Shown in pieces: positions 26,238 to 50,034 of a stretch of 64,000 bases of DNA. Position 1 is the stretch's first letter; the number at the start of each line of letters is the position of its first letter. The DNA lies in IMG/VR virus record IMGVR_UViG_3300032770_000002, positions 62,001 through 126,000 of that record; one strand, given 5' to 3'. The translations under genes were made by a program, and so were the position numbers. The notes beneath the pieces were generated by a model. That model searched no databases. It was given only the letters and a program-made list of their open reading frames with translations, and had not been told where the DNA came from.

Positions 26238-26456
26238 ATGGACGCCCGAGCGACGATTGACCACCTCATTGAGCAGGACCACTTGCGCTCCCTGCAGAAG
26301 AGCCTCTTTGCCCGGGCCATGCGTCTCTTTGATGACGGTTACACCCCCGACGAGATCTTCCAAGTCGTCAAGAAAACTGACGGACAGTTACCGGCTCACT
26401 TTGTCGACACGGTCAAGTCCGCGTGGCAGGAATATCGAAGGCGCGGGTTCGCATGA
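26238..26456 (+). CDS. Leader-bearing small protein (MDARATIDHLIE)
   Basis: Shared leader; similar to 10732..10920. Confidence 0.7.
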   Translation: MDARATIDHLIEQDHLRSLQKSLFARAMRLFDDGYTPDEIFQVVKKTDGQLPAHFVDTVKSAWQEYRRRGFA

Positions 26457-33987: not shown

Positions 33988-33991
33988 CGCG

Positions 33992-34450
33992 TCACGCTGG
34001 TGGTGCCGGAGGTGGTTGCGGAGGCTGAATTGGTTGCGGTGCGGGCGGGGTCGCCTTTGACGCAAAATACTGGCGCAGTTGGTCGATGACCTCGCGCACG
34101 CCAACGCCAGCGGCTCCACACATCGCCCCTAATTGCCAGCTGCTTGCCGGCATCTTGCCCGCTTCGGCTATGAGCCAGTTGGCCAACACGCCAAGCATCG
34201 GGGCCACAATCGGCCAGATGGTGCCTGAGATGTTCACGTTAACCTTAGACGCGGCCCACTTAATCCCGGCGATGACGAGTGGGACGATGGCGATGATGAG
34301 TGCATTCCACATCCCGACCATGCCCAAGATGTCTGGGTTGGCCGGTGGCATAGGTGGCGCGTTGGTTCCTGGCGTGTTGGTCTGAGCGACTGCCCAGCAA
34401 GTGGACAACGTAAGCAACATCACGAACGCTACGAATCGTTTCGTTTTCAT
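33992..34450 (-). CDS. Signal peptide plus multi-TM protein, holin-like
   Basis: Signal sequence, three hydrophobic segments, GAAGVGVREVIDQL, Pro-rich tail. Confidence 0.55.
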   Translation of the reverse strand: MKTKRFVAFVMLLTLSTCWAVAQTNTPGTNAPPMPPANPDILGMVGMWNALIIAIVPLVIAGIKWAASKVNVNISGTIWPIVAPMLGVLANWLIAEAGKMPASSWQLGAMCGAAGVGVREVIDQLRQYFASKATPPAPQPIQPPQPPPAPPA

Positions 34451-34453: not shown

Positions 34454-34981
34454 TTACGTATCAACTTTTGCGAGTAAGCTCGGCCAGTCAACAATTTCTC
34501 CTTTGACGTGACGCAGTCGGATGTCATTTGAGGTCGGTGACGGTTTTTCGACTGAGATGTAAAAGGCATTTTCAGCAAGATTTCGGTCGTAAACCACCGT
34601 GTGGTAAATTAAGGTTCCTAAAATGGCTCGCCCTTGGTCATCGGCTTCGAAGAGTCCATCCTTGCACTTCGCATAGACCATATGCGGCAAGGACATAGTG
34701 ACAACTCTCGCTTGGTTGCCAACAATGAGCAACACCTTTTCTTGAGTAAAATCACGGTTGAGCAGACCGCTCCCTGATTCGACGGCATCGATGAAACTGA
34801 ACTTGTGAGTCTGATAACAAATTCCTGGAGGAACAGTTGCTGACCACTGGACGGTCCCACAGCATCGACTGTCAGGGCTAACGCCTCCAGCTCTTGGCCA
34901 AGGTTGACTAGGAAGGACGTGGTCGGCTGTTGTCGCGATTGCCACGAATCCAAAAGCTTTAAGAGCATCACGACGGTTCAT
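34454..34981 (-). CDS. Hypothetical with Tat-like signal (MNRRDALKAFGFVAIA)
   Basis: RRxxLK plus hydrophobic stretch; ATG 34981. Confidence 0.55.
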   Translation of the reverse strand: MNRRDALKAFGFVAIATTADHVLPSQPWPRAGGVSPDSRCCGTVQWSATVPPGICYQTHKFSFIDAVESGSGLLNRDFTQEKVLLIVGNQARVVTMSLPHMVYAKCKDGLFEADDQGRAILGTLIYHTVVYDRNLAENAFYISVEKPSPTSNDIRLRHVKGEIVDWPSLLAKVDT

Positions 34982-34992
34982 ACGAATAAGAA

Positions 34993-35562
34993 CTAAGCAT
35001 TGCGCCACCGGCCATCTGAAAGAGACTCGATAGCTGGTGGCTTTTTCACGAACATCCTCCTTCTGGACCGTTTTTGTTTCTCCCTTTTCGGACGAACTGG
35101 GTAGCCGTTAGGGTGTGGGTTTGAAGGCAGCAAAACCGGCGGTTTCGTCGCAATCGACGAACCCCGTAAGAGGACTGTCCTATCAACTAGATGATGGTTA
35201 GATGATGGTTCAAGGGCTGTCACGTGATGACAGCCCAGGCTGACACCCTGGTGGCAGCCCACCTCCACATGGGCTGTCTTGGTGACAGCCCACCTCTTTA
35301 GTCTGTAGGAATTTGATTCTTGTGAACCGTTTTTTCGAAGTGAATGATTGACTTCGATCCAACCGAGTTCGGCCATGGACTTAAGTCGACGTTCAACCGT
35401 TCGTCGAGAAACTTTGGATTTTTTGGTTATGATTTTAAGTCCAGGCCAACATTCCCCTTTGTCATTTGCGTGATCGGCTAAAATAAGAAGGATAAGGAGA
35501 TCGGATTGATCGTGGATATTTTCGGCATCAGCCCAGACGGCTGACATTAGTTGGATGCTCAT
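34993..35562 (-). CDS. Winged-HTH (HTH_36-like) replication-initiator-type protein
   Basis: MSIQLMSAVW...LLILLILADHANDKGECWPG...SKVSRRTVERRLKSMAELGWI. Confidence 0.8.
   Translation of the reverse strand: MSIQLMSAVWADAENIHDQSDLLILLILADHANDKGECWPGLKIITKKSKVSRRTVERRLKSMAELGWIEVNHSLRKNGSQESNSYRLKRWAVTKTAHVEVGCHQGVSLGCHHVTALEPSSNHHLVDRTVLLRGSSIATKPPVLLPSNPHPNGYPVRPKREKQKRSRRRMFVKKPPAIESLSDGRWRNA
35189..35297. repeat. Iteron-like repeats inside the HTH gene
   Basis: TGACAGCCC-like at 35228, 35241, 35252, 35283; inverted GGGCTGTC at 35214 and 35271; AGATGATGGTT x2 at 35189-35210. Confidence 0.7.
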
Positions 35563-35789: not shown

Positions 35790-35825
35790 ATTTTTGTTTA
35801 CAAAATCACGTTGGCGTGGTATATT
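35790..35825 (+). promoter_or_regulatory. Early promoter (T4-early-like)
   Basis: TTTACA 35797-802, 17 bp, GTGG-TATATT 35820-25; ATG 6 nt downstream. Confidence 0.82.
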
Positions 35826-37346: not shown

Positions 37347-37832
37347 GTGAAATCGCGTTCGCTTATCGACGCACTGGTGTTCAACAACCCGTCCGACCTT
37401 GTGTCGATGACGGAGTCGTTTGACCTTCATCCAAAAAATGACTCGTCAAGATTCAGTGTTTCGAGTTGGGTGTGGAAGGCCCTGCTGTGGGTGATCGAGA
37501 GTTCGGCCGCGCTCGCTGGGCTCGCCATTGACTTTGACTACTGGGACTCCAATGACAACCGCGGACTAGGAACCCAGGCCGAGTGCGATGAACTGGCCGA
37601 CGCCATTGAAAAGTTTATTCGCGGCCGGTCAGATGACTTCGTCTTTCACCGCCCATTCAGTGAGGGTGAAAAGCAAAGCATCGTCTTGATGCTCATCAAC
37701 AGCACCGGGTCAACGCAAGCTGACGCTGAGGACTTTGTTCGGCGTGAGACAAAACACTACGTCGTTGACGTCGCGACGATTCGCGAGTTCATCGCATTCC
37801 TACGCCAGTGCGGCGGCTTCGAAATCGGCTGA
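37347..37832 (+). CDS. Leader-bearing hypothetical (MKSRSLIDAL)
   Basis: Variant leader; TGATG overlap with next gene. Confidence 0.65.
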   Translation: MKSRSLIDALVFNNPSDLVSMTESFDLHPKNDSSRFSVSSWVWKALLWVIESSAALAGLAIDFDYWDSNDNRGLGTQAECDELADAIEKFIRGRSDDFVFHRPFSEGEKQSIVLMLINSTGSTQADAEDFVRRETKHYVVDVATIREFIAFLRQCGGFEIG

Positions 37833-38083
37833 TGAAGGCGTGGCACTTATACATTGTCCGGTGTGTGGACAACTCGCTTTACACAGGCATCACGACTGAC
37901 GTGGCCCGCCGAGTCGTGGAGCACAACACGTCGCCACGTGGCGCCCGCTACACGCGGTCAAGGCGGCCGGTAGAGCTGGTGTGGAAGAGCCTTGGCGTTG
38001 AGCGGTCATTTGCGGCCAAGGCAGAAGCGAAGTTTAAGACCTACTCGAAGCGGCAGAAAGAGGAATTTCTGAAGATGCTATGA
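37832..38083 (+). CDS. Small GIY-YIG nuclease (YhbQ/UPF0213-like)
   Basis: WHLYIVRCVDNSLYTGITTDVARRVVEHN...GARYTRSRRPVELVW. Confidence 0.88.
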   Translation: MKAWHLYIVRCVDNSLYTGITTDVARRVVEHNTSPRGARYTRSRRPVELVWKSLGVERSFAAKAEAKFKTYSKRQKEEFLKML

Positions 38084-39141
38084 TCCTTCACGAGGTCAAC
38101 CTCAACCAAGGCCGAATTGGCGTCGAGATGGAAATGCTCATTCGCCTCGACCTGTCACGCGACGCGGACACGCACGTGACTGACCCTCGTTTCAGGGCCA
38201 AGATGCGCCAGGTCTTCACTGACTGTGGCTTCACCCTCGGTGATGACCCAACGGTCATTCAGCACAGCCTCTCAACGGACATCTTTTACGCCAGCTTTGA
38301 GACGGCCAACCAGGAGCTTGAGGGCGCGGCGTGGAGCGACCTTGAGCCAAGGCTGACGGCGCTCCTTTCATGGCTGAAGCGCAACGACCGAGTTTGGGTT
38401 GACCGGATGTCTCACGCTGTCACCACCATACCGCAGTCTGGAGCGTCCTGGGCTGACACGGTGCTGCCGAGGGCCAAGATGCCGAACAACACGACGTGTG
38501 GGCTGCACATTCACTTCCACGCTGAAGACTGGTTCGGTGACTTTGACCACGCCATCCGCTTTGTCCAGCTGTGGAACCGCTCACGCGACTTCTTCAAGAA
38601 ACTGGCCCACCCGGCTCGGTATAAGACTGGCCAAGGCTACGTGGCCACCGGCGACGAGCACGCCGACATCAGCAAGCCGATGAGCGTCCCAACACCAGAC
38701 ACGGTGCGCAGGCTGAAGGCCGAGTGGGAAATGACGCCGACTGGCTATCAGGTTCGTAAAATCCTCAAGTGGATGTCACTGCACCGGTGGACGGCGCTCA
38801 ACACGACGCGGGTTGAATTTCGCAAGGACATTGAGTTTCGGCTGGCCCATGGGACGATGAACATTGGCACCATCACGCACTGGGTGAGCATGTTCGCGTC
38901 GCTCATTGAAGCCGCGAAGGAGACACGCATGCCGTCAACCTTTACGCGATACATGTGGAGTGAGGAGCGCCCGCTGATGGTTGACTACCTCAAGCGCAGT
39001 GGAAAGCTGGCCAAGGCCGACACGTCACACGCCGCGCCCTATGACCTTCCAAAGCGAATGGGCCGTCCCATTCGCCGACTGCTCTACCCGCAAAACGCCA
39101 AATTTATCCCAGTCAAAAGTGAAGGCGCGGCAACTCATTGA
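38080..39141 (+). CDS. Putative amidoligase (Amidoligase_2, GS fold)
   Basis: IGVEME, TCGLHIHF, RWTALN, DIEFRLAHGT. Confidence 0.82.
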   Translation: MILHEVNLNQGRIGVEMEMLIRLDLSRDADTHVTDPRFRAKMRQVFTDCGFTLGDDPTVIQHSLSTDIFYASFETANQELEGAAWSDLEPRLTALLSWLKRNDRVWVDRMSHAVTTIPQSGASWADTVLPRAKMPNNTTCGLHIHFHAEDWFGDFDHAIRFVQLWNRSRDFFKKLAHPARYKTGQGYVATGDEHADISKPMSVPTPDTVRRLKAEWEMTPTGYQVRKILKWMSLHRWTALNTTRVEFRKDIEFRLAHGTMNIGTITHWVSMFASLIEAAKETRMPSTFTRYMWSEERPLMVDYLKRSGKLAKADTSHAAPYDLPKRMGRPIRRLLYPQNAKFIPVKSEGAATH

Positions 39142-39760
39142 CGACGTGAATGACCAGGAGCTGCTCGTCCGGGCTCACCGGCTCGTGCTCGCCCGTGGGA
39201 TGGGCGAACAGATTCCGGCGAACGACCCAGTCCTTGCCCAGCTAACTCAAGCCGTCATTCAGTGGATGGATGAAATACAGGTCCCGGCCAGTGAGCGAAT
39301 GCGCTATCTCTACTTCGCGATTTTAAACAACACATCCGAGCACATTCGAGCGCGATTGAGCCGCAACCCACTCGAAGTCGTCTTTTACGAACTGCTACGA
39401 ACAAACCTATCGTTGCTGTGGACGGCTTATGCTAAACAAGCCGACTTTCACGAGCAGCGCAGGCTGTGGCGCAGCGCGATGCACAAGATCGCCTCAGTCA
39501 AGCGGAGTGGGTGGCAGGTGTGGCATTGTTCGCCGCGGTATCGCGACGACTCACGTATGAGCGCCAGTAGTGATGACTGCGTGGCCGTCATCCACCCGGC
39601 TTTCTTCCCATTCATTCAAACATGTCAAGGCGCTGAGCAGGTCACTGATGAGCGAGCAAGCAACATCATGGAGCCTGACGCTGGCGAATTAGAAGGACCG
39701 GATGAACCGCCATTTAACGAGACAGGTGACGTGGCTGGTGGTTATCTTGATGACGAATGA
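39119..39760 (+). CDS. Leader-bearing hypothetical (MKARQLIDD)
   Basis: GTG 39119 in frame with the ORF-track call. Confidence 0.7.
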   Translation: MKARQLIDDVNDQELLVRAHRLVLARGMGEQIPANDPVLAQLTQAVIQWMDEIQVPASERMRYLYFAILNNTSEHIRARLSRNPLEVVFYELLRTNLSLLWTAYAKQADFHEQRRLWRSAMHKIASVKRSGWQVWHCSPRYRDDSRMSASSDDCVAVIHPAFFPFIQTCQGAEQVTDERASNIMEPDAGELEGPDEPPFNETGDVAGGYLDDE

Positions 39761-40521
39761 CAGCACGAGCTAAAATTGACGAGATGGCCGAATACATGAT
39801 GGGCCAGCATAGTGAGCGCCAGAAGGCCAGGCGAAAGGTCTCCGTTGGCAAGGTTCGGCTTACCTTGGGCAAGGGGAGGTTCGGAAAGCCAGAACAGGCC
39901 ACGAAGTGGGAGCTTCGTTTCACCATTTATGGGAAGAATTACTCGATCAAGTCCTATGAAGCCTCCGGCCACTTGCCAGCATCGATAGTTCGACGCTACG
40001 GCCTTGAGGTTGGCACCGCCATAGACCCAGCGCCGGCTTACGGCCCGGCGATTGACTACCCCACGCTTAATTTTGGCGGTTGGAACAAGAATTCAACTGT
40101 CAACTCCGTCATGGACGAGATCGCCGCTGATCCAGGCAAGGGCGACGTCCTTCGGTTCTTTATTGAGCGCATCGTCCCGCTCATCAAGCAGACCGTTGAC
40201 ACGTTCAGCGTTGAGGATGACCTGCCAAAGGTCTTCATGGGAAAGGGCTCAAGGGCCGACTTGCGGTTCACCGCCCGCGGCCGCGGCTTTCGCCTCGCCT
40301 TGAACAAGTATCGCTTTACGCGTGCGGGTCCTGGCGCTCAGCTTGAGCGGTTTGTCCAAGTCGCCCGCAAGCCTGAAGACGTCCTCGCCAAGGTGGAGAT
40401 TGCCGACCAAGGGTTTCCGAGCACCTTCTGGGTCCTGCTCAACCCTGAGGAGCTTGACAGCTTTAAGGTTGACATTCAACGAAACGCGCGTGAACACGTT
40501 GGAGGCATCCTCGGCCGATGA
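39757..40521 (+). CDS. Leader-bearing protein, paralog family A (MTARAKIDE-MAEY...WVLLNPEE)
   Basis: Shared N- and C-terminal motifs with 40518, 46972 and 48577. Confidence 0.75.
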   Translation: MTARAKIDEMAEYMMGQHSERQKARRKVSVGKVRLTLGKGRFGKPEQATKWELRFTIYGKNYSIKSYEASGHLPASIVRRYGLEVGTAIDPAPAYGPAIDYPTLNFGGWNKNSTVNSVMDEIAADPGKGDVLRFFIERIVPLIKQTVDTFSVEDDLPKVFMGKGSRADLRFTARGRGFRLALNKYRFTRAGPGAQLERFVQVARKPEDVLAKVEIADQGFPSTFWVLLNPEELDSFKVDIQRNAREHVGGILGR

Positions 40522-41330
40522 ATGCACGAAACTTCATAGATTTTGTTTACAAATCACGGATTTGTGGTATGATCCGTGAGATGGCCGAGTATCGCATGCC
40601 TGACGAGCCAAAACACGTGATCACCGTGTCGACCGGCGTAAAGATTGGCGATGAGTATCTCTCACTTCGCCACTCGCGTGGCTGGTCTAATTTGTCGTGG
40701 CGCACTACAGGTCCTGCAAACGCGCAAAACATCTCCGTTTTCGCTAATTCTAGCGTGCAACTGTCTGATCGGCGTGAGCGGTCGTTTCAGGTTATTCGCC
40801 CGCCTTCGACTGAGTTTGCCACGGCTCTTCGCGAGCTCTTGCAAAAATTTTTCACAGCCCGAGGCCGTGGGATCTCACGTTTTTCATTTCCGTGGTCAAG
40901 GCACCTTAAGGCATTGAACACCAAGTTTCCAAATGCCCTCGATGACGTGAAGGCCGAGGCCTACGAAAAGGCCGAGGCGTGGGTGGCGGAAAATGAGTTT
41001 CCAAGCCATGAGCTAGAGCCAGTTGAAAAGATCGAGCTTCCAGAGCCAGTTGATGACAACCCTGAGAGGTTTTGGCCTTATCTCGCGCCGCTCATTCAAG
41101 ACATTCGCTTCATCACCCACACTAATGAAAAGAAAATTGCGGCCTTTCTCAAGTTAAAAGGGCCTGACGATGACGTTGTCCGAGTTGACATAGGCTTTCA
41201 CGAGGTTTACTTCTTGGTCAACCCCGAGGAGCGTGAGATGCTCAGGCGCGCCATCACCTTGGCGCTTCGCAAGTTCATCGAAGAGGTCGGACTTGGCCAG
41301 CGTGAAGAGGAGAACGATGAGGTCCGATGA
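40518..41330 (+). CDS. Leader-bearing protein, paralog family A, with internal early promoter
   Basis: MNARNFID-FVYKSRICGMIR-EMAEY...YFLVNPEE. Confidence 0.75.
   Translation: MNARNFIDFVYKSRICGMIREMAEYRMPDEPKHVITVSTGVKIGDEYLSLRHSRGWSNLSWRTTGPANAQNISVFANSSVQLSDRRERSFQVIRPPSTEFATALRELLQKFFTARGRGISRFSFPWSRHLKALNTKFPNALDDVKAEAYEKAEAWVAENEFPSHELEPVEKIELPEPVDDNPERFWPYLAPLIQDIRFITHTNEKKIAAFLKLKGPDDDVVRVDIGFHEVYFLVNPEEREMLRRAITLALRKFIEEVGLGQREEENDEVR
40541..40573 (+). promoter_or_regulatory. Early promoter embedded in frame in a CDS leader
   Basis: TTTTGTTTACAAATCACGG (identical to 17761-79), 16 bp spacer, TGTGG-TATGAT 40568-73; ATG 40581 lies 7 nt downstream. Confidence 0.78.
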
Positions 41331-41695
41331 TGCGAGCCAAGCACCTCATCGACGAGATCAATCGTGACAAGGTAGTCATGCTTCAACGGTTGGGGGCCGG
41401 GCTTAGTGTTTGTGATGAGCCGCCGTGGTTTGGCCAGATAACTTCCATCAAGTCTGGTGTCTTAGGCATCGAGCTTGACGACTGCGCCAACTTGCTTGAC
41501 CACTGGTGGCTGCACCACGCCACATTTAGCCCAAGCACAATCGGTGAGTCTGGCGTCTACGTGTCCAAGAGCTGGCATCATGGGAGCGTGGAAGAGGACA
41601 TTCGCCAGAATTTCAAAAACGGAATGCCAATCTCATTCTGGCTTGTCAAGTTCAACGCCTCGCGTGACAAGGTCAACTTCTTTCTCAACCAATGA
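41330..41695 (+). CDS. Leader-bearing hypothetical (MRAKHLIDE)
   Basis: Shared leader. Confidence 0.7.
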   Translation: MRAKHLIDEINRDKVVMLQRLGAGLSVCDEPPWFGQITSIKSGVLGIELDDCANLLDHWWLHHATFSPSTIGESGVYVSKSWHHGSVEEDIRQNFKNGMPISFWLVKFNASRDKVNFFLNQ

Positions 41696-42039
41696 CTCAG
41701 TATGTCAAGGCAGTTCGCACGCCCGTTGCGTGGCATGAGGCGCACGCTAGGACGGACCGGTTCCTGGTTGAGGAGGTCACCCGACACGGGCGTGAGCGGA
41801 TGTCCAAGGGCGAGGACGTGCTTTACGGCGAGGACGTCGACGGGCTCATCCACCTCAAGCCAGAGCCGAACGGGAACGGGATAAGCCGAGTGCTGCGGAA
41901 GAACTCCATCGTTCGCAACGCGACGACGGCCATCTACGTCTGTGACTTCGATAAGCCAACGTGGGGCGTCCGTCAAGCTTACTACTACGTCGAGTTCATC
42001 AGCCCGCAGGAATATGTCAGGCACCTACTTAACTCATAG
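41692..42039 (+). CDS. Hypothetical protein
   Basis: 115 aa, ATGA coupled. Confidence 0.55.
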   Translation: MTQYVKAVRTPVAWHEAHARTDRFLVEEVTRHGRERMSKGEDVLYGEDVDGLIHLKPEPNGNGISRVLRKNSIVRNATTAIYVCDFDKPTWGVRQAYYYVEFISPQEYVRHLLNS

Positions 42040-42042
42040 AAA

Positions 42043-42597
42043 ATGAGCGACTCAGTCAAGCGCATCTTGGGCGAGGCGAATTACACGCGCCTTGGCATGG
42101 CTTCATTCGTCAACAAGGTCAACGGCGTGTTGAAGCAGCTTGACGGGCTTAACGACGAGCACGTCAAGCAAGCTGCCAATGACCTGCGCCAAGCGATGGG
42201 ACGATACGTCGTCAGCCAAAACCTTGAAGGAAAAGAGGAAGGGCATCGATTTACGCCGCATGAACTCCAGGTGGCCACGATGGCCGCGACCGGGTCAAAG
42301 AACTGGGTAATTTCCGCTAACGCGGCGATGATAACAATGGAGTATGATGATGTCATCAATGCCCTCAGTGACTCTGGAGTTTACGCCGATGAGGAGGACG
42401 TCGACTTCATCATCTTGGCGAATAGACCACAAGACATCCTCATCACCACGGCCACCGTCCCAGGGACAATTTTAGTCCTGACAGTCAACAAAGGTGACTC
42501 CGTGTCGGACTACTTCATCGCGGCCGACCTCGAGTCCTACAAGGCCCAGCTTCAAGACACGATAGCGGAGCTCACGCAAAATTTGGAAACTGACTGA
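42043..42597 (+). CDS. Hypothetical with leader-like start (MSDSVKRILGE)
   Basis: 184 aa; two modules split by QNLE. Confidence 0.6.
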   Translation: MSDSVKRILGEANYTRLGMASFVNKVNGVLKQLDGLNDEHVKQAANDLRQAMGRYVVSQNLEGKEEGHRFTPHELQVATMAATGSKNWVISANAAMITMEYDDVINALSDSGVYADEEDVDFIILANRPQDILITTATVPGTILVLTVNKGDSVSDYFIAADLESYKAQLQDTIAELTQNLETD

Positions 42598-42610
42598 ACT
42601 CCACAAACTA

Positions 42611-44719
42611 ATGATCCCACTCAAGACATTCAAGGAAGGCATGATGATGCGGCTCTTACCGCGCGTCATCAGCCAAGCGGACAAGCGGGGGCAAATTGAG
42701 GCCGCCATCTCGGGTTTCCAGGACCGCATTGAGCAGCTCCGAGCCCTCGTCGACGGCTACCAGTCGCTGATCGACCCAACGATCGACCAGGGGCGCACCC
42801 CAAACGCCATCATCGTCACCTTTACCTCGAGCTTTGGGAAGACCGTTCGCCGCTCCCTGTGGCTCACCCCATACCTTGACACGGTCGCCACGCTCCTCGG
42901 TTACCAGAACGTGGACAAGGCGCCATTGCTGGCGTGGGCCGAGAGCCTGTTAGGGCTCAACACGGGGCAGGTGACCGACGTCGCCCTCGGGCATGACCAA
43001 GCCATGGCGCCACTGCAGTCGACGGCGCGCCTCCTCGCGAAGACCCTCGGCGTGATGGAGCTGCCTGACTCCACGCCTGACTCAACGGTCCGCCTCCTCG
43101 CCCGAGACCAGCTCCAGTATGCGCAGGCCAAGGGCACCCCTCGGGCGCTGAGCCAGAGGCTGTTTGCGCTCGGCTTCCAGGACGCCATCTTGAGCCCGCT
43201 CTGGTGCAGGTTGGCAGTCCGTGGGGACAATTCTCTGCTTCCTAGGGAAGCAGTGGTCGCCGGCGCAGAGTTGGACCGGCGCCCAACGGCCGACCAAGTT
43301 CCAGAGGACGCAACCTACGACATCACGGCTCTCCGGGACGGCGTGTTCTCACTGTGGAGCCAGACCTGCTCACTCCAAGACTCAACGCAAGCTTATACAA
43401 GCGTCAACGGCGACTCCCCGTTCGTCCAGGTCGCGCTCCTCGGCAATTCCAATCCAAACTATCGCGGCGAGTTCTCCACGCGCGAGCAATACGGCCTGGG
43501 CGACGTGGCGACACTGTCCGGCTCAACATACCTGGCGACGGCATACCCGCCAGGAACCCCCGGCGCCGACAACTCCGGCTGGACTCGAATCAAACAACCT
43601 GCAGCTGAAGCAGTCCCAGAGGACCAGCCGGTTGAATACACGCTTGCAGGCGGAACCCCTTCGGAAGAAGCAACCGCCGAGCTGCTGGATGAGGACGGCA
43701 ATGCAACGGGCATCACGCTGTCGGCCATTGCGCCTGGAACGGCCTTCAACGGCCTGCGCGTCAAGCTGTCGGCGTGGTCGCTTAACAACCTCTCCACGCT
43801 GCCGAGCGTCACGTCGGCCCAGCGCGTCAGCATGGGGTCGTATGGGCCAGGCACTTTTAGGCTGTCCTATGTCGGCGGCGCGTGGCAATACTACCCGAAC
43901 CGGTGGGTCGTCACCAAGCAGCCGACCGGTTCGCCGGGTTGGTTCATCACATTTTACGCCGGCAGCGTTGCGAATGCGGTCAACCTGCCAGAGCCAGACA
44001 CGACGAGCGGCTACTCCAGTTTGGCTGACGCAAAGGCTCACGTGCGTGACGCGTCGGTCACCTTCGATCACCCTGGTGGTGAGATCTGGTTCGAGTTCAC
44101 TGACGTGGTTGACGGGTATGCCAACAACGCGGTAGGAATGCCAATGCCGACCTTCAAGCTTGAGGACTTCTCACCTGAGCGCCGGAGCCTGACGGTGTTT
44201 GACCGGTTGAGCAAGGTCAAGTTTCGGTCGAGTAACTTTGACGCGCTGGCGGCACCAGCAGCAATACCCGTTGAGCCAATCCAACCGAACGAGCTGCTGC
44301 GTGACAACCCGACCTTGATTCCAGGCTACACGGCTGTCGCGCCTTACCGGCCATTTGGCGGCGCCAGTTTTACCCAGGTCGATGCGACGGCCGTCCAGCT
44401 GGCAGACGACAAGCTGTCTGACGAAGACGCGCTGGTGAACTCGGTCATTGAGGACTGGCGGCCGGCAACTAGGACTCCAAGAAGGAGCGGCATTGCCATC
44501 CCAATCGTTGATGAAGAACGGATTGCACCATATGACATGAGCGAGATCCTGTTCACGACGAACGGTGAGACTGAGGTCTTTTCTGGGACGTCGACCGACC
44601 CGCTTCCACCGAAGTTTATCGACTCACTGAGCGGGGTGTCACTCGACATCGTTGACTTGGCAACGGAAGACCTAGCCATTTTCATCACGGAAGACGGTAA
44701 GATTCTGATCACCGAATGA
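42611..44719 (+). CDS. Probable tail/baseplate protein with carbohydrate-binding-like insert
   Basis: YAQAKGTPRAL segment as in baseplate/tail P2_I-type proteins; QYGLGDVATLSGSTYLA...SGW resembles CBM5/12. Confidence 0.55.
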   Translation: MIPLKTFKEGMMMRLLPRVISQADKRGQIEAAISGFQDRIEQLRALVDGYQSLIDPTIDQGRTPNAIIVTFTSSFGKTVRRSLWLTPYLDTVATLLGYQNVDKAPLLAWAESLLGLNTGQVTDVALGHDQAMAPLQSTARLLAKTLGVMELPDSTPDSTVRLLARDQLQYAQAKGTPRALSQRLFALGFQDAILSPLWCRLAVRGDNSLLPREAVVAGAELDRRPTADQVPEDATYDITALRDGVFSLWSQTCSLQDSTQAYTSVNGDSPFVQVALLGNSNPNYRGEFSTREQYGLGDVATLSGSTYLATAYPPGTPGADNSGWTRIKQPAAEAVPEDQPVEYTLAGGTPSEEATAELLDEDGNATGITLSAIAPGTAFNGLRVKLSAWSLNNLSTLPSVTSAQRVSMGSYGPGTFRLSYVGGAWQYYPNRWVVTKQPTGSPGWFITFYAGSVANAVNLPEPDTTSGYSSLADAKAHVRDASVTFDHPGGEIWFEFTDVVDGYANNAVGMPMPTFKLEDFSPERRSLTVFDRLSKVKFRSSNFDALAAPAAIPVEPIQPNELLRDNPTLIPGYTAVAPYRPFGGASFTQVDATAVQLADDKLSDEDALVNSVIEDWRPATRTPRRSGIAIPIVDEERIAPYDMSEILFTTNGETEVFSGTSTDPLPPKFIDSLSGVSLDIVDLATEDLAIFITEDGKILITE

Positions 44720-44943
44720 TACGCCTTTACAAGTTTAACCTGACCAACCAGGTCAAGGTCACGTGTGAGCGGCCCGAGATCTCGGTTGTCAAGGCTTTAG
44801 TGGCATTTAACTGTGGCCGCCACATCTTAAGCGGCTGGGTCAATGGGCTTGAGACAGCGCTCTTCAGGTTTGACGATTCAAGCGACACCGAAAAGTTTAT
44901 GAACCAGCTATCAGCAAGGTGCGACGTCCTGCGTCTTAATTGA
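44716..44943 (+). CDS. Small protein, paralog family B
   Basis: ALVAFNCGRHILSG...FRFDD..D...F..QLSARC. Confidence 0.6.
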   Translation: MIRLYKFNLTNQVKVTCERPEISVVKALVAFNCGRHILSGWVNGLETALFRFDDSSDTEKFMNQLSARCDVLRLN

Positions 44944-44945
44944 AA

Positions 44946-45437
44946 ATGAAAGCACGCGACGTCATTGAGCAGTCAATTCGGTGGTCCAAGCCTAATCCGG
45001 TCATCACGGTTGTTCCGATGGAACCAGAGGAGGTGGAACTTGTCGCGTCACTGGCCAATCGACGAGTCAAGCGAGTCGATAGCCTCTTCTTTTGGGATGA
45101 GGCCATCGGGTCTCATTTGATTGTTGGCGACCAACAATTTAAAATCATCCACTCACAGGATTATCTGCGAAGAAAGTTCAAAAATGTCTTGAACACTGGG
45201 CACGGTGGAGAGAATTTAGGATTTGGCCGGCAAACGTTTCTTACCTCTCAGCCGCCTGGTCCAGGTCAATTCCAAGAGCTTAACCCTGGGATTTACATCA
45301 TGGTGTTCAAGACTGAACAGGGTTGGGTTGTGCTTCGAAAAGTTTCAGGGTTGGATGACGTGCAGTCTTACGGCCATCCTATTCCGGACTTGAAGCAAGC
45401 AATCGACGTGTTTCTCAGCCTGTTGAAGAACCCGTAA
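44946..45437 (+). CDS. Leader-bearing hypothetical (MKARDVIEQ)
   Basis: ATG 44946. Confidence 0.7.
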   Translation: MKARDVIEQSIRWSKPNPVITVVPMEPEEVELVASLANRRVKRVDSLFFWDEAIGSHLIVGDQQFKIIHSQDYLRRKFKNVLNTGHGGENLGFGRQTFLTSQPPGPGQFQELNPGIYIMVFKTEQGWVVLRKVSGLDDVQSYGHPIPDLKQAIDVFLSLLKNP

Positions 45438-45453
45438 ATGCGTGATTTTCAAA

Positions 45454-46221
45454 ATGAAGGCCCACCACATCATTGAGATGGCCATGCGCAAGGCGCGCAA
45501 GGTCAAGTATCATGCCATTGACAGCACGGACGTTGGTGGCCGAGGAAACTATGGCACCAGCGAGTATGATACGGTTCACGCCGACCAAGTCTTGAAGCTG
45601 TTGAAGAAGATTGACTGGAGCCGAGGACCAGCCGCTGAACTCTTGGCCTATGCGGCTAGGGTCGCCAAGGGTTGGCGTGACAACCCGCGAAAACCAGATG
45701 ACGATGACATGGTCACACCTAAGCTGCGGCGTGAGTTCAGCCAGTTAACGATGAACTTGGAGGGTTCACACATTCTCGGCCTCGCTCTCCACCCGGCGAT
45801 GGTCTACAAGATTGGGCGCGGCGGAGCCTTGCATCCAAATCAATGTTTTGGCCACGCCCGTGACGAGGCTAAATCTTCCGGCTCGGACGTCGTCGTTGGA
45901 CTCTTGGTCGACCAGAACAGTCTGCCATACAAGTTCAAGAAATCTCTCGTCCCGCTCATTGGCGGTGACCGTTACCCGGAAGACCCAGACTGGGTTGTCC
46001 ACGCGTGGAACCAAAAAGACGGCAAGATGTATGACGTCACGCGGAGCGGCGGCTACGCTTACTACCCGGGCCGAATTATCCCGGCGGCTGAAGCCGTCGG
46101 CATGACTGAGATGGGGATAGCTCAGGCGGCGTGGCAGTTTAGCACCGCGTGTGAGATGGCCGTTGACACGTATCGCAGGACGCCGGAGTTTCAAGCCATT
46201 TTACGAAAGGCCATGGAGTGA
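45454..46221 (+). CDS. Leader-bearing hypothetical (MKAHHIIE-MAM); C..HA W..D putative catalytic-like residues
   Basis: ATG 45454; QCFGHA, VVHAWN, YDVT. Confidence 0.7.
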   Translation: MKAHHIIEMAMRKARKVKYHAIDSTDVGGRGNYGTSEYDTVHADQVLKLLKKIDWSRGPAAELLAYAARVAKGWRDNPRKPDDDDMVTPKLRREFSQLTMNLEGSHILGLALHPAMVYKIGRGGALHPNQCFGHARDEAKSSGSDVVVGLLVDQNSLPYKFKKSLVPLIGGDRYPEDPDWVVHAWNQKDGKMYDVTRSGGYAYYPGRIIPAAEAVGMTEMGIAQAAWQFSTACEMAVDTYRRTPEFQAILRKAME

Positions 46222-46610
46222 AAGCTAGGCGGGTCATCGACGAGGACCGTAGCCCGATCCAAGCTTGGTTTCGGGTAAAGGCAAGCGAAGCTTTGAAAGG
46301 GAATGAGTTGTCCTTTACGGAAGTCCTTGAGTGGATCATGACCTACGACTCAAATCCTGACTTATATCTCGAAGAGCCGTCACGCGATCTAATGGTCGCG
46401 TGGGAGTTTATCAAAAACAACATTCGGAGCCACGTCAGTGAACCGTGTGACAGCGAGGAGTTGGCCAAATTTGCGGCGTGGTCACACTCTTGGCTGGGCA
46501 CCGGATATGACATCTTTACCTGTGCTTTTGGCGAGGACGTGGCGGCATTCGCAATCAACCCAGCGCTCAGCCCACTTTTTAAGGCTGAAGGACTTCATCA
46601 GGCCACGTGA
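46218..46610 (+). CDS. Leader-bearing hypothetical (MKARRVIDE)
   Basis: GTGA coupled. Confidence 0.7.
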   Translation: MKARRVIDEDRSPIQAWFRVKASEALKGNELSFTEVLEWIMTYDSNPDLYLEEPSRDLMVAWEFIKNNIRSHVSEPCDSEELAKFAAWSHSWLGTGYDIFTCAFGEDVAAFAINPALSPLFKAEGLHQAT

Positions 46611-46975
46611 AAGCTGTAGCGCGCGTCATCGACAAGTTCAAGCGTTGGATTAAGTCGCACAAGCTTGGTGAACCTTATGTCGTGACCACGAGCTACGTCC
46701 ACGACATGCCACTTCTCCCGGGCGTTTATCATCGATACATGATTTCTGGCGGCGATTTTCCACTGGACATGCGGACTGACTTCTGTCAGGTCGATGATAA
46801 GGTTGACTCGCTCATTCACTCACTGGCCACGCTTAACGGCGGAAGTTACCTCAAGAGCGGTATGATTAACCACGACCGCCTCATCGTCTTTACGTTCGAT
46901 GACCTCGCCGACGTGGACAACTTCAAGCTTCAACTGGACCGACGGGCACCGAAGGTCGTGGTTAGGGTGAAATGA
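46607..46975 (+). CDS. Leader-bearing protein, paralog family B (MKAVARVID)
   Basis: SLATLNGGSYLKSG...FTFDD..D...F..QL.RR.P. Confidence 0.7.
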   Translation: MKAVARVIDKFKRWIKSHKLGEPYVVTTSYVHDMPLLPGVYHRYMISGGDFPLDMRTDFCQVDDKVDSLIHSLATLNGGSYLKSGMINHDRLIVFTFDDLADVDNFKLQLDRRAPKVVVRVK

Positions 46976-47805
46976 ACGCGCGCACGGTTATTGACGAGAT
47001 GGCGCAATATTATGTCGGCCCGATGCGACCTTACGACGAGACTCACGTTGAGGATGTCGAGCTGAAGTTTTATGACCGCAGGCGCTTTGACCAGAAGTGG
47101 TATTTCACAGCTACTGTTTATCACAAAGGGAAGATTTACAGGTATCGAATTAATGGCAGTCTGTCAGAGCGGCTGATCAATAAAGTGAAGACAGTGTCAT
47201 CGCGGACGTGGAAAGGCTTTGAAGATAAGATTCAATTAAACCCACTCCTTTGGAAGCTTTACACCGAGAATATCAAGCCGCAGTTTACAGCGGCGCTTAA
47301 TGACGTGAATGCGCACTTGTCGCTTCACCCAGAACGCCGGTTCGACGGCTTCAAGTTTATAGGGATGCCACATAACAGGGACAAGCCAATTGAGTCGTAT
47401 CAATTTCTTGGGCCATCCGTCAGGTTGACACCAAGGAAGCCAGACGAGGTGTTGACCTACCCATGGCTAACTCGCAAGGAGCTAATCGATTTCCTTGACG
47501 TTGAAGGTTTTCGCTATATAGACACCATTAGCCAATACGGTATCGAAATGTCAACTCGACGTGGCCGCGAGATTGGAGCAAAAGATCCACAACATCGTTT
47601 GGCTACCTTCCTTAACAAGCTTGAAAGACCGGGTGATTCACTTTTAACAATCAAATCCTCGCAAAGTGTGGGAGAGCTTTGTTGGGTCCTGATGAATCCT
47701 GAGGAGCGTAAGCGGTTTGGCCTTGAAATTAAGAGAATGGCCCGTAACAGAGTTAAAGATCTGTTGAGTCATGAAGATAATCCAGATTTAGACTTAGAAT
47801 ATTGA
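46972..47805 (+). CDS. Leader-bearing protein, paralog family A (MNARTVIDE-MAQY)
   Basis: Closely similar to 48577..49392 (YY.GP..PYDE.H.E..ELK.YDR...QKWYF). Confidence 0.78.
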   Translation: MNARTVIDEMAQYYVGPMRPYDETHVEDVELKFYDRRRFDQKWYFTATVYHKGKIYRYRINGSLSERLINKVKTVSSRTWKGFEDKIQLNPLLWKLYTENIKPQFTAALNDVNAHLSLHPERRFDGFKFIGMPHNRDKPIESYQFLGPSVRLTPRKPDEVLTYPWLTRKELIDFLDVEGFRYIDTISQYGIEMSTRRGREIGAKDPQHRLATFLNKLERPGDSLLTIKSSQSVGELCWVLMNPEERKRFGLEIKRMARNRVKDLLSHEDNPDLDLEY

Positions 47806-48053
47806 ACGTTCTGCAAGGCATGACTATCGCTGAACTCTGCAGCACCTATCGGACTTGGGTCTCGGCAACCCAAAAGGATGAACAGCGTGACCACGTCCTC
47901 TGGATGCTTGATGAAATTCCAAAGATGCCAACGGCCGATCGCGGCAAGGCAAACCGCTGGCTCGGGTTTGTCCAAGGCTGGCTGTGGACCAAGGGTTGGA
48001 GCATCGACCAGATGAGGAAGGACGTCCGCTCACTTGACAGCGGACAGTTATAG
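47802..48053 (+). CDS. Hypothetical protein (KANRWLGFVQG motif)
   Basis: 83 aa; HVLWML...GKANRWLGFVQGWL. Confidence 0.6.
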   Translation: MNVLQGMTIAELCSTYRTWVSATQKDEQRDHVLWMLDEIPKMPTADRGKANRWLGFVQGWLWTKGWSIDQMRKDVRSLDSGQL

Positions 48054-48079
48054 CGTGACGACCGCACGTTCTGTCATTT

Positions 48080-48577
48080 ATGTCATATAAGCAAAAACAA
48101 GCGTGTAGACGACGAATGGTTCGGTTGTGGAAAGATCAAAATTGGCGTAAGAAGATCGCCAAATCTACGAAACGTCAATGGTCCAACCCTGATTTTGCAT
48201 CACGCGTAAGAAACCCGATGGTGTTTTTCAACTATCTTCGCAGTAATTACAGATGCGGAGCGGCCAGACGAAATCTTCCGTTTGAATTAACCCCTGAACA
48301 AATAGCCGAGATAGTGATTCGTCCGTGTTTCTATTGCGGTTCCATGCCGGAAAAGTCAAAGTGGGCCGTCTTTATTGAACGTGGTCGAGCAGTCTACAGG
48401 CGATTTAGCGTTGTTCCGGATCATCACGGGATTGATCGTGTTGAAAATTCAAAGGGTTACACTCTCGACAATGTTGTAAGTTGTTGCAGTATTTGTAACG
48501 TCGCTAAAAGAACGATGTCGAAAGATGCATTCTTAGAGTGGGCAAAAAGATTGGCCCATCATCAAGGTTGGATTTAA
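48080..48577 (+). mobile_element. Free-standing HNH (His-Me) endonuclease
   Basis: CFYCG...GIDRVENSKGYTLDNVVSCCSICNVAK; AT-richer than its flanks. Confidence 0.85.
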
Positions 48578-49392
48578 TGGACTCACGCCAAACTATTGAT
48601 AGGATTTTTGAGATGGCGCGATACTACATCGGCCCGATCAAGCCGTATGACGAGATTCACCTTGAAAACGCTGAGCTGAAGTATTACGACCGCAAGCGTG
48701 GGCCACAGAAGTGGTATTTTCGGGTCAATGTCCTCTATCAAGGGCGGGTCTTTGAATATAGGAATTGGGGAGACCTTGCGAAGCGCCACACGAGTAGCAT
48801 TGATTGGGAGAAGCGGCGTGAGCTGAAGCAGACCAACCAGCCGAAGGCCATCTTCTCAATGTCTTCAATGACGTTGAAGAAGTGGGAGGAAAAGGCCGCC
48901 AAGAACCCAGACGTCTGGAAGCTCTACACCGAGACCATCAAGCCGCACCTCGACAAGTCACTTGAGGACTTTGAGAAGATGTCTGGCAAGCCAACGATTC
49001 AGCCCGACCAATTTCTTTCAGGAACTGCTAACCGGCAAGACGACGACACGTGGGCCGATCCAGAGCGTTGGAGAAGAGCGGCGAATCCGCGCGATTTTTC
49101 ATGGCTGTCGAACGATCAGTTTCGACAGGTTCTCGATGATGAGGGCATTCGCTACATGCAGGACATCGCCGAATATGGTGTGGAACGCTACGCCAAGTAT
49201 TGGCAAATGGACGATTGGAAGCGTGTGGCGGTGTTTATCGACAAGCTGATGAAGCCAGACGACAAGTTGTTCGACATCAGAACGGCTCAGCGTCACCACG
49301 ACTACGTCCTGATGAACCCAGAGGAGCAGGAGCGGTTTGAAGCGCGCATTCAACGGCTGGCCCGCCAGAATGTCAGCGGCATGCTCTCATGA
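48577..49392 (+). CDS. Leader-bearing protein, paralog family A (MDSRQTIDRIFE-MARY)
   Basis: TAATG overlap with the HNH stop; YVLMNPEE. Confidence 0.78.
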   Translation: MDSRQTIDRIFEMARYYIGPIKPYDEIHLENAELKYYDRKRGPQKWYFRVNVLYQGRVFEYRNWGDLAKRHTSSIDWEKRRELKQTNQPKAIFSMSSMTLKKWEEKAAKNPDVWKLYTETIKPHLDKSLEDFEKMSGKPTIQPDQFLSGTANRQDDDTWADPERWRRAANPRDFSWLSNDQFRQVLDDEGIRYMQDIAEYGVERYAKYWQMDDWKRVAVFIDKLMKPDDKLFDIRTAQRHHDYVLMNPEEQERFEARIQRLARQNVSGMLS

Positions 49393-49700
49393 AAGCGCGT
49401 GACATCGTTGATGATGGCTTCAAGAAGCTTCGGCGTTTTTACATGGAGGTGGGTTTTCCAGCCGACTCAGACGACCTAATCGGACCTACTGTTCACGCCA
49501 TTGCGGCGTTAAATGGTGGCCAGCACATGGCTTCTGGCTTCAGTAACAAACGAAGACACATTGTCTTCGTGTTTGACAGCGAACCTGACGCCAATTCGTT
49601 TCAAGAGCAAGTTCACAAGCGGTGTCCATCCGTCGATTTCTATGGGCGCGGCGGCATGCTTCCGACGCGTTTTTCATTGCCATTTCATGACTCCCCGTGA
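49389..49700 (+). CDS. Leader-bearing protein, paralog family B (MKARDIVDD)
   Basis: AIAALNGGQHMASG...FVFDS..D...F..QV.KRCP. Confidence 0.72.
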   Translation: MKARDIVDDGFKKLRRFYMEVGFPADSDDLIGPTVHAIAALNGGQHMASGFSNKRRHIVFVFDSEPDANSFQEQVHKRCPSVDFYGRGGMLPTRFSLPFHDSP

Positions 49701-50034
49701 CGTCATTGAGTTGCTGAACTTGGACTCGCGGTTCGTGGTTGTCTACACGCCAGGGTCGGAGAGGTCGGGTGGGTCAGATAGCATTGCGACAGTTCTGATT
49801 GGACTTTCAGCCATGAACGACGGCTATTTTTGGGCCGGCTCATTCTCTAGCTTAAACAAAGAACGGGCGTTCCTGTTTGAATTTAAAGACCCTAACGACG
49901 CCTTGAACTTCAAGAAGCAGGTCTTGTCACGCTGTCCAGACGCTGACGTGGTAACCCGGCCGTTCTGCGGCTTGGCTCCGACCACGTTCAGGGAGAAGCA
50001 GGTTCAGTCGATCGTCGTGCGAAAATCAGGGTGA
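49687..50034 (+). CDS. Leader-bearing protein, paralog family B (MTPRDVIE)
   Basis: LSAMNDGY...FEFKD..DA..F..QV.SRCP. Confidence 0.7.
   Translation: MTPRDVIELLNLDSRFVVVYTPGSERSGGSDSIATVLIGLSAMNDGYFWAGSFSSLNKERAFLFEFKDPNDALNFKKQVLSRCPDADVVTRPFCGLAPTTFREKQVQSIVVRKSG

What the first reader, a model, noticed from the sequence alone, without database searches (positions are those of the whole stretch)
39757..49392. Four-member expanded paralog family A (E-MAxY ... [WY]xLxNPEE) among the leader genes
Seen: 39757, 40518, 46972 and 48577 (about 255-280 aa) share E-MA[EQR]Y at the N-terminus and a C-terminal block (WVLLNPEELDSFKVDIQRNAREHV / YFLVNPEEREMLRRAI / WVLMNPEERKRFGLEIKRMARNRV / YVLMNPEEQERFEARIQRLARQNV). 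The middles diverge strongly, although 46972 and 48577 are much closer to each other. I recognise no family. Inference: a diversifying family under arms-race pressure, for example targeting variable host defence proteins.
Basis: partly seen in the sequence, partly recalled or inferred. Interest (0 to 1): 0.6.

Follow-up and report, generated by a model that had tools for sequence, protein, structure and literature searches.

The report
Protease-tagged phage protein family, expanded
The four genes are real members of an uncharacterised family (at least 13 copies in this 230-kb wetland phage) whose conserved ends look like cut sites for the phage's T4-type head protease, so they are probably proteins loaded into the capsid, though nothing here proves it.

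Summary
The four ORFs are homologous. 46972 and 48577 match at E=3e-54, and 40518 scores 4e-15 against a profile built without it. They belong to a family of at least 13 domain-bearing ORFs in this 230-kb DTR myovirus. About 47 further representatives exist in metagenomes, and none in Pfam, PHROGs, GenBank phages or PDB.

Each unit has four parts:
- an N-terminal leader, M-K/N-A-R-x-V/L-I-D, shared at peptide level by at least 33 otherwise unrelated genes;
- the motif [L/I/V]-x-E followed by M/S/A-P/A-x-Y/F;
- a variable middle;
- an ~85-aa alpha/beta domain with no confident structural match, ending R..V..L(G)(E).

In other phages the units are fused head to tail, with junctions reading L-G-E then S/A. 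The genome encodes a T4 gp21-type (S77) prohead protease and a gp23-type capsid protein. The published gp21 cut motif is L/I-x-E. The protease ORF itself carries R-L-G-E-S just after its catalytic domain.

Best reading (about 0.4): capsid-targeted, protease-processed internal head proteins, analogous to T4 internal proteins with their targeting sequence.

The arms-race idea is untested. Most paralogues are ancient and have orthologues elsewhere.

The parts
39757..40521 (+). Family member 1 (254 aa, pI 9.8). Orthologue P0025 at 42% identity.
40518..41330 (+). Family member 2 (270 aa). It overlaps member 1 by ATGA. The leader is followed by a 12-residue insert before IRE|MAEY. Orthologues P0027 and P0031 at ~33% identity.
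   Evidence: (leave-one-out E=4.3e-15)
46972..47805 (+). Family member 3 (277 aa). Closest paralogue of member 4.
48577..49392 (+). Family member 4 (271 aa, from the ATG at 48577).
39757..39783 (+). Leader M-T-A-R-A-K-I-D-E of member 1. The predicted L/I-x-E site is I7-D8-E9, followed by M10.
40518..40580 (+). Leader plus insert of member 2 (M1-E21). The predicted site is I19-R20-E21, followed by M22.
46972..46998 (+). Leader M-N-A-R-T-V-I-D-E of member 3. The predicted site is I-D-E9, followed by M10.
48577..48612 (+). Leader M-D-S-R-Q-T-I-D-R-I-F-E of member 4. The predicted site is I10-F11-E12, followed by M13.
40252..40518 (+). Conserved C-terminal alpha/beta domain of member 1 (aa ~166-254), with topology beta-alpha-beta-alpha-beta-beta-alpha.
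   Evidence: pLDDT 83.5
41043..41288 (+). C-terminal domain of member 2 (aa ~176-257).
47446..47778 (+). C-terminal domain of member 3 (aa ~159-269). It has a low-confidence insert at aa 190-203.
49117..49389 (+). C-terminal domain of member 4 (aa ~181-271).

Best explanation
The four genes are members of a modular phage protein family. Each unit has four parts: a short N-terminal leader (M-K/N-A-R-x-V/L-I-D); a [L/I/V]-x-E site followed by M/S/A-P/A-x-Y/F; a variable middle that differs between subfamilies; and a conserved ~85-aa alpha/beta domain whose last helix ends R..V..L(G)(E).

The most likely mechanism is as follows. The leader works like the T4 capsid-targeting sequence and brings the protein into the assembling prohead core. 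The phage's T4 gp21-type (S77) prohead protease then cuts after the Glu of the L/I-x-E motif. In the fused multi-unit versions of other phages it would also cut at the L-G-E|S/A junctions. The mature protein stays inside the head with the DNA and is probably ejected into the host.

Shown here:
- homology and family size;
- peptide-level conservation of the leader;
- position-specific L/I/V-x-E;
- fused and split forms with L-G-E junctions;
- presence of the S77 protease and the gp23-type capsid gene.

Inferred, not shown: targeting, cleavage, packaging, ejection, and any anti-defence role.
For: 1. The genome has T4-type head machinery. The ORF at genome 15553-17388 matches Pfam Peptidase_S77 at 59.6 bits (cut-off 27). 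The ORF at 17422-18873 matches Pfam Gp23 at 84.7 bits.

2. Published gp21 specificity is L/I-x-E, and the T4 targeting sequence is a ~10-residue N-terminal peptide ending in that motif, shared by otherwise unrelated internal proteins (PMC9026906, PMC3012670, PMC9958956).

3. In 58 family units from 59 proteins, the residue two before the conserved Glu is L 33, I 14, V 7, while the residue between varies.

4. Unbiased clustering of N-termini gives one dominant cluster of 24 in this genome, all carrying the leader. At least 33 genes carry it in total. In 21 of those 33, [LIV]-x-E has its Glu at residue 8-15, against 13% of control ORFs (p=3e-11).

5. Codons of the leader vary synonymously, so the peptide is what is conserved, not DNA or RNA.

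6. Homologues in other phages are polyproteins of 2-3 full units or many C-domains (P0004, P0012-14, P0039). Their junctions read ..R..V..[L/M]-G-E|[S/A], followed by a leader or by L-M-E|M-P. Many stand-alone members stop at the equivalent Glu (..LDDE..LDTE..IGGE). P0016 fuses the equivalents of two adjacent G000 genes.

7. The protease ORF itself has R-R-L-G-E|S-T-P immediately after the catalytic domain. This is conserved as L-R-E|S/A in its closest relatives. C-terminal autocleavage has been reported at the equivalent place in SPN3US gp245 and phiKZ gp175, and proposed for T4 gp21 (PMC5694885).

8. One member (genome 12935-13480) lies ~2 kb upstream of the protease and capsid genes. A 580-aa ORF (32693-34435) has leader-like M-A-N-S-R-E-I-L-E, then the domain, then S-L-G-E|S.

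9. Eight of 12 members are basic, pI 8.7-9.8.
Against: - There are no virion proteomics, expression data or isolate.
- The phage is known only from a wetland metagenome, and no RNA run holds it.
- Complex prediction gave no verdict.
- A related 238-kb phage with a 70%-identical capsid protein and the same protease type has neither the family nor any shared leader. The head machinery therefore does not require them.
- About a third of leader genes lack a Glu in the right place.
- The window's leader genes sit in a long, tightly packed + strand block headed by a sigma-70-like promoter match. Such a block looks more like an early region than a late one, but this is weak: the count of promoter matches is not above shuffles.
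- L/I/V-x-E is a short motif, and its conservation could simply reflect an amphipathic helix.
- 33 packaged species would be many for a T4-type head.
Confidence: 0.4

Rival explanations
1. These are cytoplasmic host-takeover or anti-defence proteins that are never packaged. The leader and the R..V..LGE tail would be linker or docking helices of a modular, recombining protein family, or a tag read by some other phage or host factor. The resemblance to protease sites would be coincidental.
For: The genes lie in a dense block of small ORFan genes headed by a sigma-70-like promoter match. That block also holds enzymes: Amidoligase_2 at window 26453 and 38080, and a DMP19-like DNA-mimic domain in one leader protein. 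A relative with the same head genes lacks the system. A third of leaders lack the Glu.
Against: This does not explain several observations:
- The Glu and the hydrophobic residue two positions before it are the best-conserved positions across very divergent homologues.
- Fused forms have L-G-E|S/A at every junction, and split forms stop at that Glu.
- The same L-G-E-S follows the catalytic domain of the S77 protease.
Confidence: 0.3
2. These are prohead core, scaffold or 'inner body' components. They would be packaged and processed as in the best explanation, but their role would be structural (head size, DNA condensation). They would be degraded or retained as bulk protein, not act as host-directed effectors.
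For: - One member sits next to the protease-scaffold and capsid genes, in the position of T4 genes 67/68.
- Most members are basic.
- The subfamilies are ancient and individually conserved rather than fast-evolving.
- phiKZ and SPN3US have paralogous processed internal proteins with conserved propeptides (PMC5694885).
Against: A relative with a 70%-identical capsid protein does without them. The 13 copies have very different middles. There is no coiled-coil or scaffold-like prediction in the models.
Confidence: 0.2
3. The C-terminal domain is a Phd/YefM-like dimeric DNA- or protein-binding module, so the proteins are regulators or antitoxin-like factors.
For: A profile of 66 C-domains gives weak, near full-length hits to several YefM/RelJ antitoxin chains (E 0.16-0.48). 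From memory only, the beta-alpha-beta-beta-alpha core and the 'VL..PEE...L' strand-helix junction resemble that fold.
Against: - The E-values are not significant, and the printed alignment is out of register with the fold.
- No member hits Pfam PhdYeFM at E<=1.
- PF02604 finds nothing in the genome although it fires in the control genomes.
- No YefM/Phd chain is among the 50 rows shown (Z 2.7-4.7) in the exhaustive structural search.
Confidence: 0.05

Closest known systems
T4 internal proteins IPI/IPII/IPIII (and Alt) with the capsid-targeting sequence
   Same: A ~10-residue N-terminal peptide is shared by otherwise unrelated proteins. It ends in L/I-x-E, the motif cut by the gp21 (S77) prohead protease. 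The phage here has gp21-type and gp23-type genes. The cargo is diverse, lineage-variable and mostly basic (PMC9026906, PMC3012670).
   Different: There is no sequence similarity to the T4 proteins or to the T4 leader (M-K-T-Y-Q-E-F-I-A-E). The system is far larger here: at least 33 leader genes and at least 13 family members. It also has a conserved C-terminal domain and a second conserved L-G-E site, and it exists as multi-unit polyproteins in relatives. Neither feature is described for T4 internal proteins in the papers read here.
phiKZ / SPN3US paralogous ejection and inner-body proteins (e.g. SPN3US gp53/gp54, phiKZ gp93)
   Same: These are giant-phage paralogues that have diverged extensively but keep an identical or near-identical N-terminal propeptide holding the protease motif. 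Cleavage is always after Glu, and propeptides carry multiple sites (PMC5694885).
   Different: Those phages use an S80 protease with an A/S/G-x-E motif. Here the protease matches S77 and the motif is L/I/V-x-E. There is no sequence or fold match to BFVD or PDB entries.
T4 prohead core proteins gp67/gp68
   Same: These are small proteins encoded next to the protease gene and cut by gp21 into fragments. One family member (genome 12935-13480) occupies a comparable position.
   Different: Most members are scattered in two distant clusters, and no sequence similarity was found.

Membership tests
T4-type capsid-targeted internal proteins (functional class) | The phage encodes a gp21-type (S77) prohead protease and a gp23-type capsid protein. 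| tested here: met
   Pfam Peptidase_S77 at 59.6 bits and Gp23 at 84.7 bits, both above cut-off.
T4-type capsid-targeted internal proteins (functional class) | A short N-terminal peptide is shared by otherwise unrelated proteins and conserved at the peptide level. | tested here: met
   The largest N-terminal cluster in the genome has 24 members, and at least 33 genes carry the leader in total. Synonymous codons vary. The longest shared DNA word is 18 nt.
T4-type capsid-targeted internal proteins (functional class) | The propeptide ends in the L/I-x-E protease motif. | tested here: met
   All four window members meet it. In 54 of 58 family units the residue two before the Glu is L, I or V. Among leader genes, 21 of 33 meet it, so for the wider leader set it is met only in part.
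T4-type capsid-targeted internal proteins (functional class) | The protein is physically present in the virion, with its N-terminus trimmed by the protease. | not testable with these tools
   The phage is uncultured and from a wetland metagenome. The complex prediction gave no verdict.
T4-type capsid-targeted internal proteins (functional class) | Sequence homology to T4 IPI/IPII/IPIII. | tested here: not met
   No Pfam or PHROGs family matches. There is no tblastn hit in 50,697 GenBank phage records.
phiKZ-like inner-body / ejection protein paralogues | An S80 protease with an A/S/G-x-E motif, and homology to the phiKZ or SPN3US proteins. | tested here: not met
   The protease matches S77, not S80. 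The motif is L/I/V-x-E. There is no viral-structure or phage DNA match.
WGR domain (N-terminal beta-rich part of 46972) | A significant Pfam or structural match to WGR. | tested here: not met
   Foldseek's best hits are PARP WGR domains, but at E 0.13 and probability <=0.47. The exhaustive search (VIA) instead ranks LptE-like chains first, at Z 5.6. There is no Pfam hit at E<=1.
Phd/YefM antitoxin fold (C-terminal domain) | A match to PF02604 or a structural match to YefM/Phd. | tested here: not met
   see the rival explanation.

The most novel reading that the evidence does not exclude
The leader plus the L/I-x-E and L-G-E sites form a portable capsid-delivery and processing tag. In this T4-like jumbo phage lineage it would be attached to at least 33 genes. 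The cargo would include the 13-member family, an amidoligase and a DMP19-like DNA mimic. That would make it an injected-protein arsenal several times larger than T4's. It would evolve by fusion and fission of polyprotein units at the protease sites.
Probability: 0.2. Interest if true: 0.8.

Novelty: new variant of a known kind. Interest (0 to 1): 0.55.

Why it matters
If the reading is right, this lineage shows the T4 'targeting sequence plus protease' packaging principle scaled up to dozens of cargoes. It also shows that principle combined with polyprotein architecture.

That would give three things:
- a sequence rule (leader plus L/I-x-E) for predicting injected proteins in uncultured T4-like jumbo phages;
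- a catalogue of candidate anti-defence effectors;
- a natural tag for loading foreign proteins into large capsids.

Independently of mechanism, the work defines an unannotated protein family and a small alpha/beta domain without a detectable structural relative. The family has about 59 cluster representatives among 1.84 billion.

Tried and rejected
**Family and structure searches**
- Pfam and PHROGs on the four proteins, and Pfam on 66 C-domains: nothing.
- Word-index protein search: only self.
- Foldseek against PDB and BFVD, the exhaustive VIA search and ESM Atlas, on the full model and on the C-domain model. The best results were Z 5.6 (LptE-like), Z 4.7 (a de novo designed protein) and TM 0.50. 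None is convincing.
- WGR and Phd/YefM resemblances: not supported.

**Binding test**
- Complex prediction of the protease domain with the first 45 residues of 46972: no verdict. It is evidence neither for nor against.

**Searches for relatives**
- megablast and tblastn against GenBank phages: no match.
- The search for related loci with the whole-family alignment failed because no stretch was conserved enough. With a subfamily alignment it found no relatives in IMG/VR.
- Contigs of homologues are short or have no DNA available. No dN/dS and no co-occurrence test with head genes was therefore possible.
- Relatives found through the capsid protein (65-87% identity) lack the family in their 20-kb loci, and the one whole 238-kb record examined lacks it too.

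**Regulatory signals and repeats**
- The T4 late-promoter consensus TATAAATA is absent from the genome.
- The sigma-70 and terminator scans are not above shuffles.
- A DNA-level repeat as the explanation of the leader is rejected: codons vary, and the longest shared words are 12-18 nt.
- The two 702-aa ORFs next to family members are unrelated to each other.

**Not used**
- Read laying, because no RNA run holds the stretch.
Full report
**Setting.** The window is bases 62,001-126,000 of a 230,253-bp virus record with direct terminal repeats. The record was assembled from a wetland metagenome.
- It is a myovirus, with a tail sheath gene at genome 40057-42720.
- Its capsid protein belongs to Pfam Gp23 and its prohead protease to Pfam Peptidase_S77, the T4 gp21 family. 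The protease is fused to a long C-terminal region.
- The capsid protein is at most 31% identical to that of any cultured phage.
- The 11 kb around the finding has no near match in GenBank phages.

**Check of the observation.** The four ORFs are present at the stated coordinates.
- Their N-termini read M-T-A-R-A-K-I-D-E-M-A-E-Y, M-N-A-R-N-F-I-D...I-R-E-M-A-E-Y, M-N-A-R-T-V-I-D-E-M-A-Q-Y and M-D-S-R-Q-T-I-D-R-I-F-E-M-A-R-Y.
- The C-terminal blocks are as quoted.
- 46972 and 48577 align over their full length at 36% identity, E=3e-54.
- 39757 aligns with 46972 at E=1e-8.
- 40518 is only marginal in pairwise BLAST. A profile of 63 C-terminal domains that excludes 40518 and its two orthologues still scores it at E=4.3e-15.
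- The homology is therefore real. It extends over an ~85-residue domain, not just NPEE.
- No Pfam or PHROGs family matches.

**The family is larger than four.** A profile made from the four C-termini alone retrieves eight more ORFs from the whole genome at E<=1e-6. Iteration and the leave-one-out profile add a 13th. Genome coordinates of the members:
- 12935-13480;
- 32693-34435, where the domain lies near the N-terminus of a 580-aa ORF;
- the four window genes;
- 138790-140598, a 602-aa ORF with at least two fused units;
- 140595-141230;
- 145357-146001;
- 146203-146982;
- 146979-147653;
- 154468-155244;
- 206867-207541.

**Relatives elsewhere.** A profile search of 1.84 billion cluster representatives found 62 hits.
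- Three are spurious repeat proteins.
- Twelve are this genome's own.
- About 47 are foreign metagenomic proteins.
- None is in GenBank phages.
- None was found in IMG/VR.

**Anatomy of a unit.**
- *Leader.* The leader is M-K/N-A/S-R-x-V/L-I-D.
- *Conserved Glu.* After zero to twelve further residues comes a conserved Glu, followed by M/S/A-P/A-x-Y/F. In homologues this often reads L-L-E-S-P-E-Y or L-M-E-M-P-R-Y. Across 58 units, the residue two positions before the Glu is L 33, I 14, V 7, and the residue between is free.
- *Middle.* The middle region differs between subfamilies. In 46972 it is predicted as a four-stranded sheet plus helices (pLDDT 80-95 for residues 20-110). It has no convincing structural relative: WGR at Foldseek E 0.13 and LptE-like at Z 5.6.
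- *C-terminal domain.* Modelled with 66 sequences at pLDDT 83.5 and pTM 0.70, it has the topology beta-alpha-beta-alpha-beta-beta-alpha. It has no match in PDB or the ESM Atlas above Z 4.7 / TM 0.5. No sequence match to any solved chain is significant.
- *End of the unit.* The last helix ends R..V...L, usually followed by G/D and often E.

**Fused and split forms.** Several foreign homologues contain two or three complete units in one ORF (P0004, P0012, P0013, P0014) or many C-domains in a row (P0039, P0035, P0044).
- Every junction reads ..R..V..[L/M/I]-G-E, then S or A. This is followed by a leader-like stretch or directly by L-M-E-M-P.
- Many single-unit proteins stop at the equivalent Glu (..LDDE..LDTE..IGGE..LASE).
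- P0016 is one ORF equivalent to two adjacent genes of this genome, 146203-146982 plus 146979-147653.
- The genome's own 602-aa ORF has S-L-L-G-E-S and H-K-L-G-E-S-S-A-R-S-V-V-D-E-M-A-Q-F inside it.
- The same R..V..L-L-G-E-S/A string also occurs in an unrelated leader-bearing paralogue set, at 147650 and 148748.
- Leader and tail are therefore the two halves of a conserved inter-unit junction. In this genome the junction has mostly been split into abutting or ATGA-overlapping genes.

**The leader is a genome-wide, peptide-level signal.**
- Clustering the first ten residues of all candidate starts gives one dominant cluster of 24 in this genome, all with the leader. With looser matches, at least 33 genes carry it.
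- Ala, Arg, Ile and Asp codons vary freely. The longest shared DNA words are 12-18 nt. It is therefore not a DNA or RNA element.
- In 21 of 33 leader proteins, a [LIV]-x-E has its Glu at residue 8-15, against 13% of control ORFs (p=3e-11).
- Leader-bearing proteins are mostly ORFans. One has a DMP19-like (DNA-mimic) domain above the Pfam cut-off, and one is an Amidoligase_2 enzyme.

**Link to the head protease.** The reviews read here state four points:
- T4 gp21 cuts after Glu in the short motif L/I-x-E.
- T-even internal proteins are a diverse set sharing only this leader.
- Alt is cut at both ends (PMC9026906, PMC3012670, PMC9958956, PMC5694885).

Giant phages phiKZ and SPN3US have diverged paralogous ejection proteins with identical propeptides that carry the motif.

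In this genome:
- The S77-type protease ORF carries R-R-L-G-E-S-T-P directly after the catalytic domain. Its closest relatives have L-R-E-S/A there. C-terminal autocleavage has been reported at the equivalent point in SPN3US gp245 and phiKZ gp175, and proposed for T4 gp21.
- The capsid protein has conserved M/L-L-E-N and R-L-D-E-V-T just before the start of the Gp23 profile match.
- One family member lies ~2 kb upstream of the protease gene.
- The 580-aa ORF has M-A-N-S-R-E-I-L-E, then the domain, then S-L-G-E-S.

**Interpretation.** Taken together, the most economical reading is that the leader, the L/I/V-x-E site and the L-G-E site are targeting and processing signals for the S77 prohead protease. 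The family members would then be internal head proteins.

I put this at about 0.4, for these reasons:
- Nothing physical supports it.
- A related 238-kb phage with a 70%-identical capsid protein and the same protease type has neither the family nor any shared leader.
- A third of the leaders lack the Glu.
- The genes lie in a block that looks early rather than late, on weak evidence.
- The motif is short.
- The complex prediction gave no verdict and counts for nothing either way.

**What the proteins do after packaging is open.**
- The evolutionary pattern argues against rapid recent diversification. Each subfamily has an orthologue at 33-51% identity in other phages, closer than any in-genome paralogue. 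The exception is the 46972/48577 pair, which duplicated after the split from the P0043 lineage.
- A structural or DNA-condensing role is a serious alternative. Most members are basic.

**Novelty.** The family and its C-terminal domain are undescribed in the libraries searched. If correct, the mechanism is a scaled-up, polyprotein-capable variant of a known principle: the T4 targeting sequence and processing by gp21. I therefore class it as a new variant of a known kind.

Noticed in passing
window starts 9474, 10313, 10732, 26238, 26453, 37347, 39119, 41330, 44946, 45454, 46218, 46607, 49389, plus genome-wide: The N-terminal leader M-K/N-A-R-x-V/L-I-D is carried by at least 33 genes of the 230-kb genome, most of them ORFans. 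It is conserved as a peptide, not as DNA. A related 238-kb phage lacks it entirely.
   Followed up: yes
genome coordinates 12935-13480, 32693-34435, 138790-141230 (-), 145357-147653, 154468-155244, 206867-207541 (loci L006-L011): Nine further ORFs outside the window carry the family domain. They include a 602-aa fused multi-unit ORF. They also include a 580-aa ORF with a CxC...CxH (SWIM-like, read by eye) motif and a C-terminal G-S-R-E-F-G-G repeat.
   Followed up: partly
window 46607-46975, 49389-49700, 49513-50034: A second small paralogue set ('family B') shares ..LNGG...SG....R.IVF.FD...DA..F..Q...R.P.. Two of the three also carry the leader. BLAST links 46607 and 49389.
   Followed up: partly
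window 26453-27535 and 38080-39141: Two paralogous Amidoligase_2 (PF12224) proteins, at 32-36 bits against a cut-off of 22. The first starts with the leader M-R-A-R-D-S-I-D-V-L-F-E.
   Followed up: partly
genome 190795-191952 (L018:4795-5952): A 386-aa leader-bearing protein has a DMP19-like (DNA mimic) domain, at 29 bits against a cut-off of 25. It is a candidate anti-restriction or DNA-binding-protein decoy.
   Followed up: no
window 17763, 19945-20817; genome 37848 (-), 144213, 223742: A second shared N-terminal motif, M-F-T-N/K-x-x-x-C-G-I, occurs on five otherwise unexamined ORFs.
   Followed up: no
window 34454-35008 (-), with neighbours 33992-34450 (-) and 34993-35562 (-): A 184-aa ORF matches the C-terminal third of the major capsid protein (31% over 103 aa, E=1e-9). 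It may be a gp24-like vertex paralogue, perhaps split over adjacent ORFs. Another fragment lies at genome 136625-136981 (-).
   Followed up: partly
window 42611-44719: A 702-aa ORF in the middle of the leader-gene block has a sub-threshold hit to the P2 gpI baseplate family (Tail_P2_I, E=0.002, 18.3 bits against a cut-off of 20.6). If real, the block is not purely an early region.
   Followed up: no
window 48080-48577 (also genome 51091-51804 (-) and 168213-168896): A 165-aa ORF with an HNH-like CxxC...HH..DR...N...CxxCN pattern (read by eye; Pfam gave no hit) sits between the two closest paralogues, 46972 and 48577. It has two paralogues elsewhere in the genome. A GIY-YIG-like ORF, also read by eye only, lies at 37808-38083.
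   Followed up: no
window 40499-40516 and genome 147631-147648: An identical 18-nt stretch (TTGGAGGCATCCTCGGCC, encoding ..G-G-I-L-G) lies just before the start codons of 40518 and of an unrelated leader gene at genome 147650. The junction may have been duplicated or recombined.
   Followed up: partly
window 35797-35825 (+): The best sigma-70-like promoter match (TTTACA, 17-nt spacer, TATATT, with an upstream TG) lies in the divergent gap that heads the long + strand block containing the finding. The overall count of promoter matches is not above shuffles.
   Followed up: no
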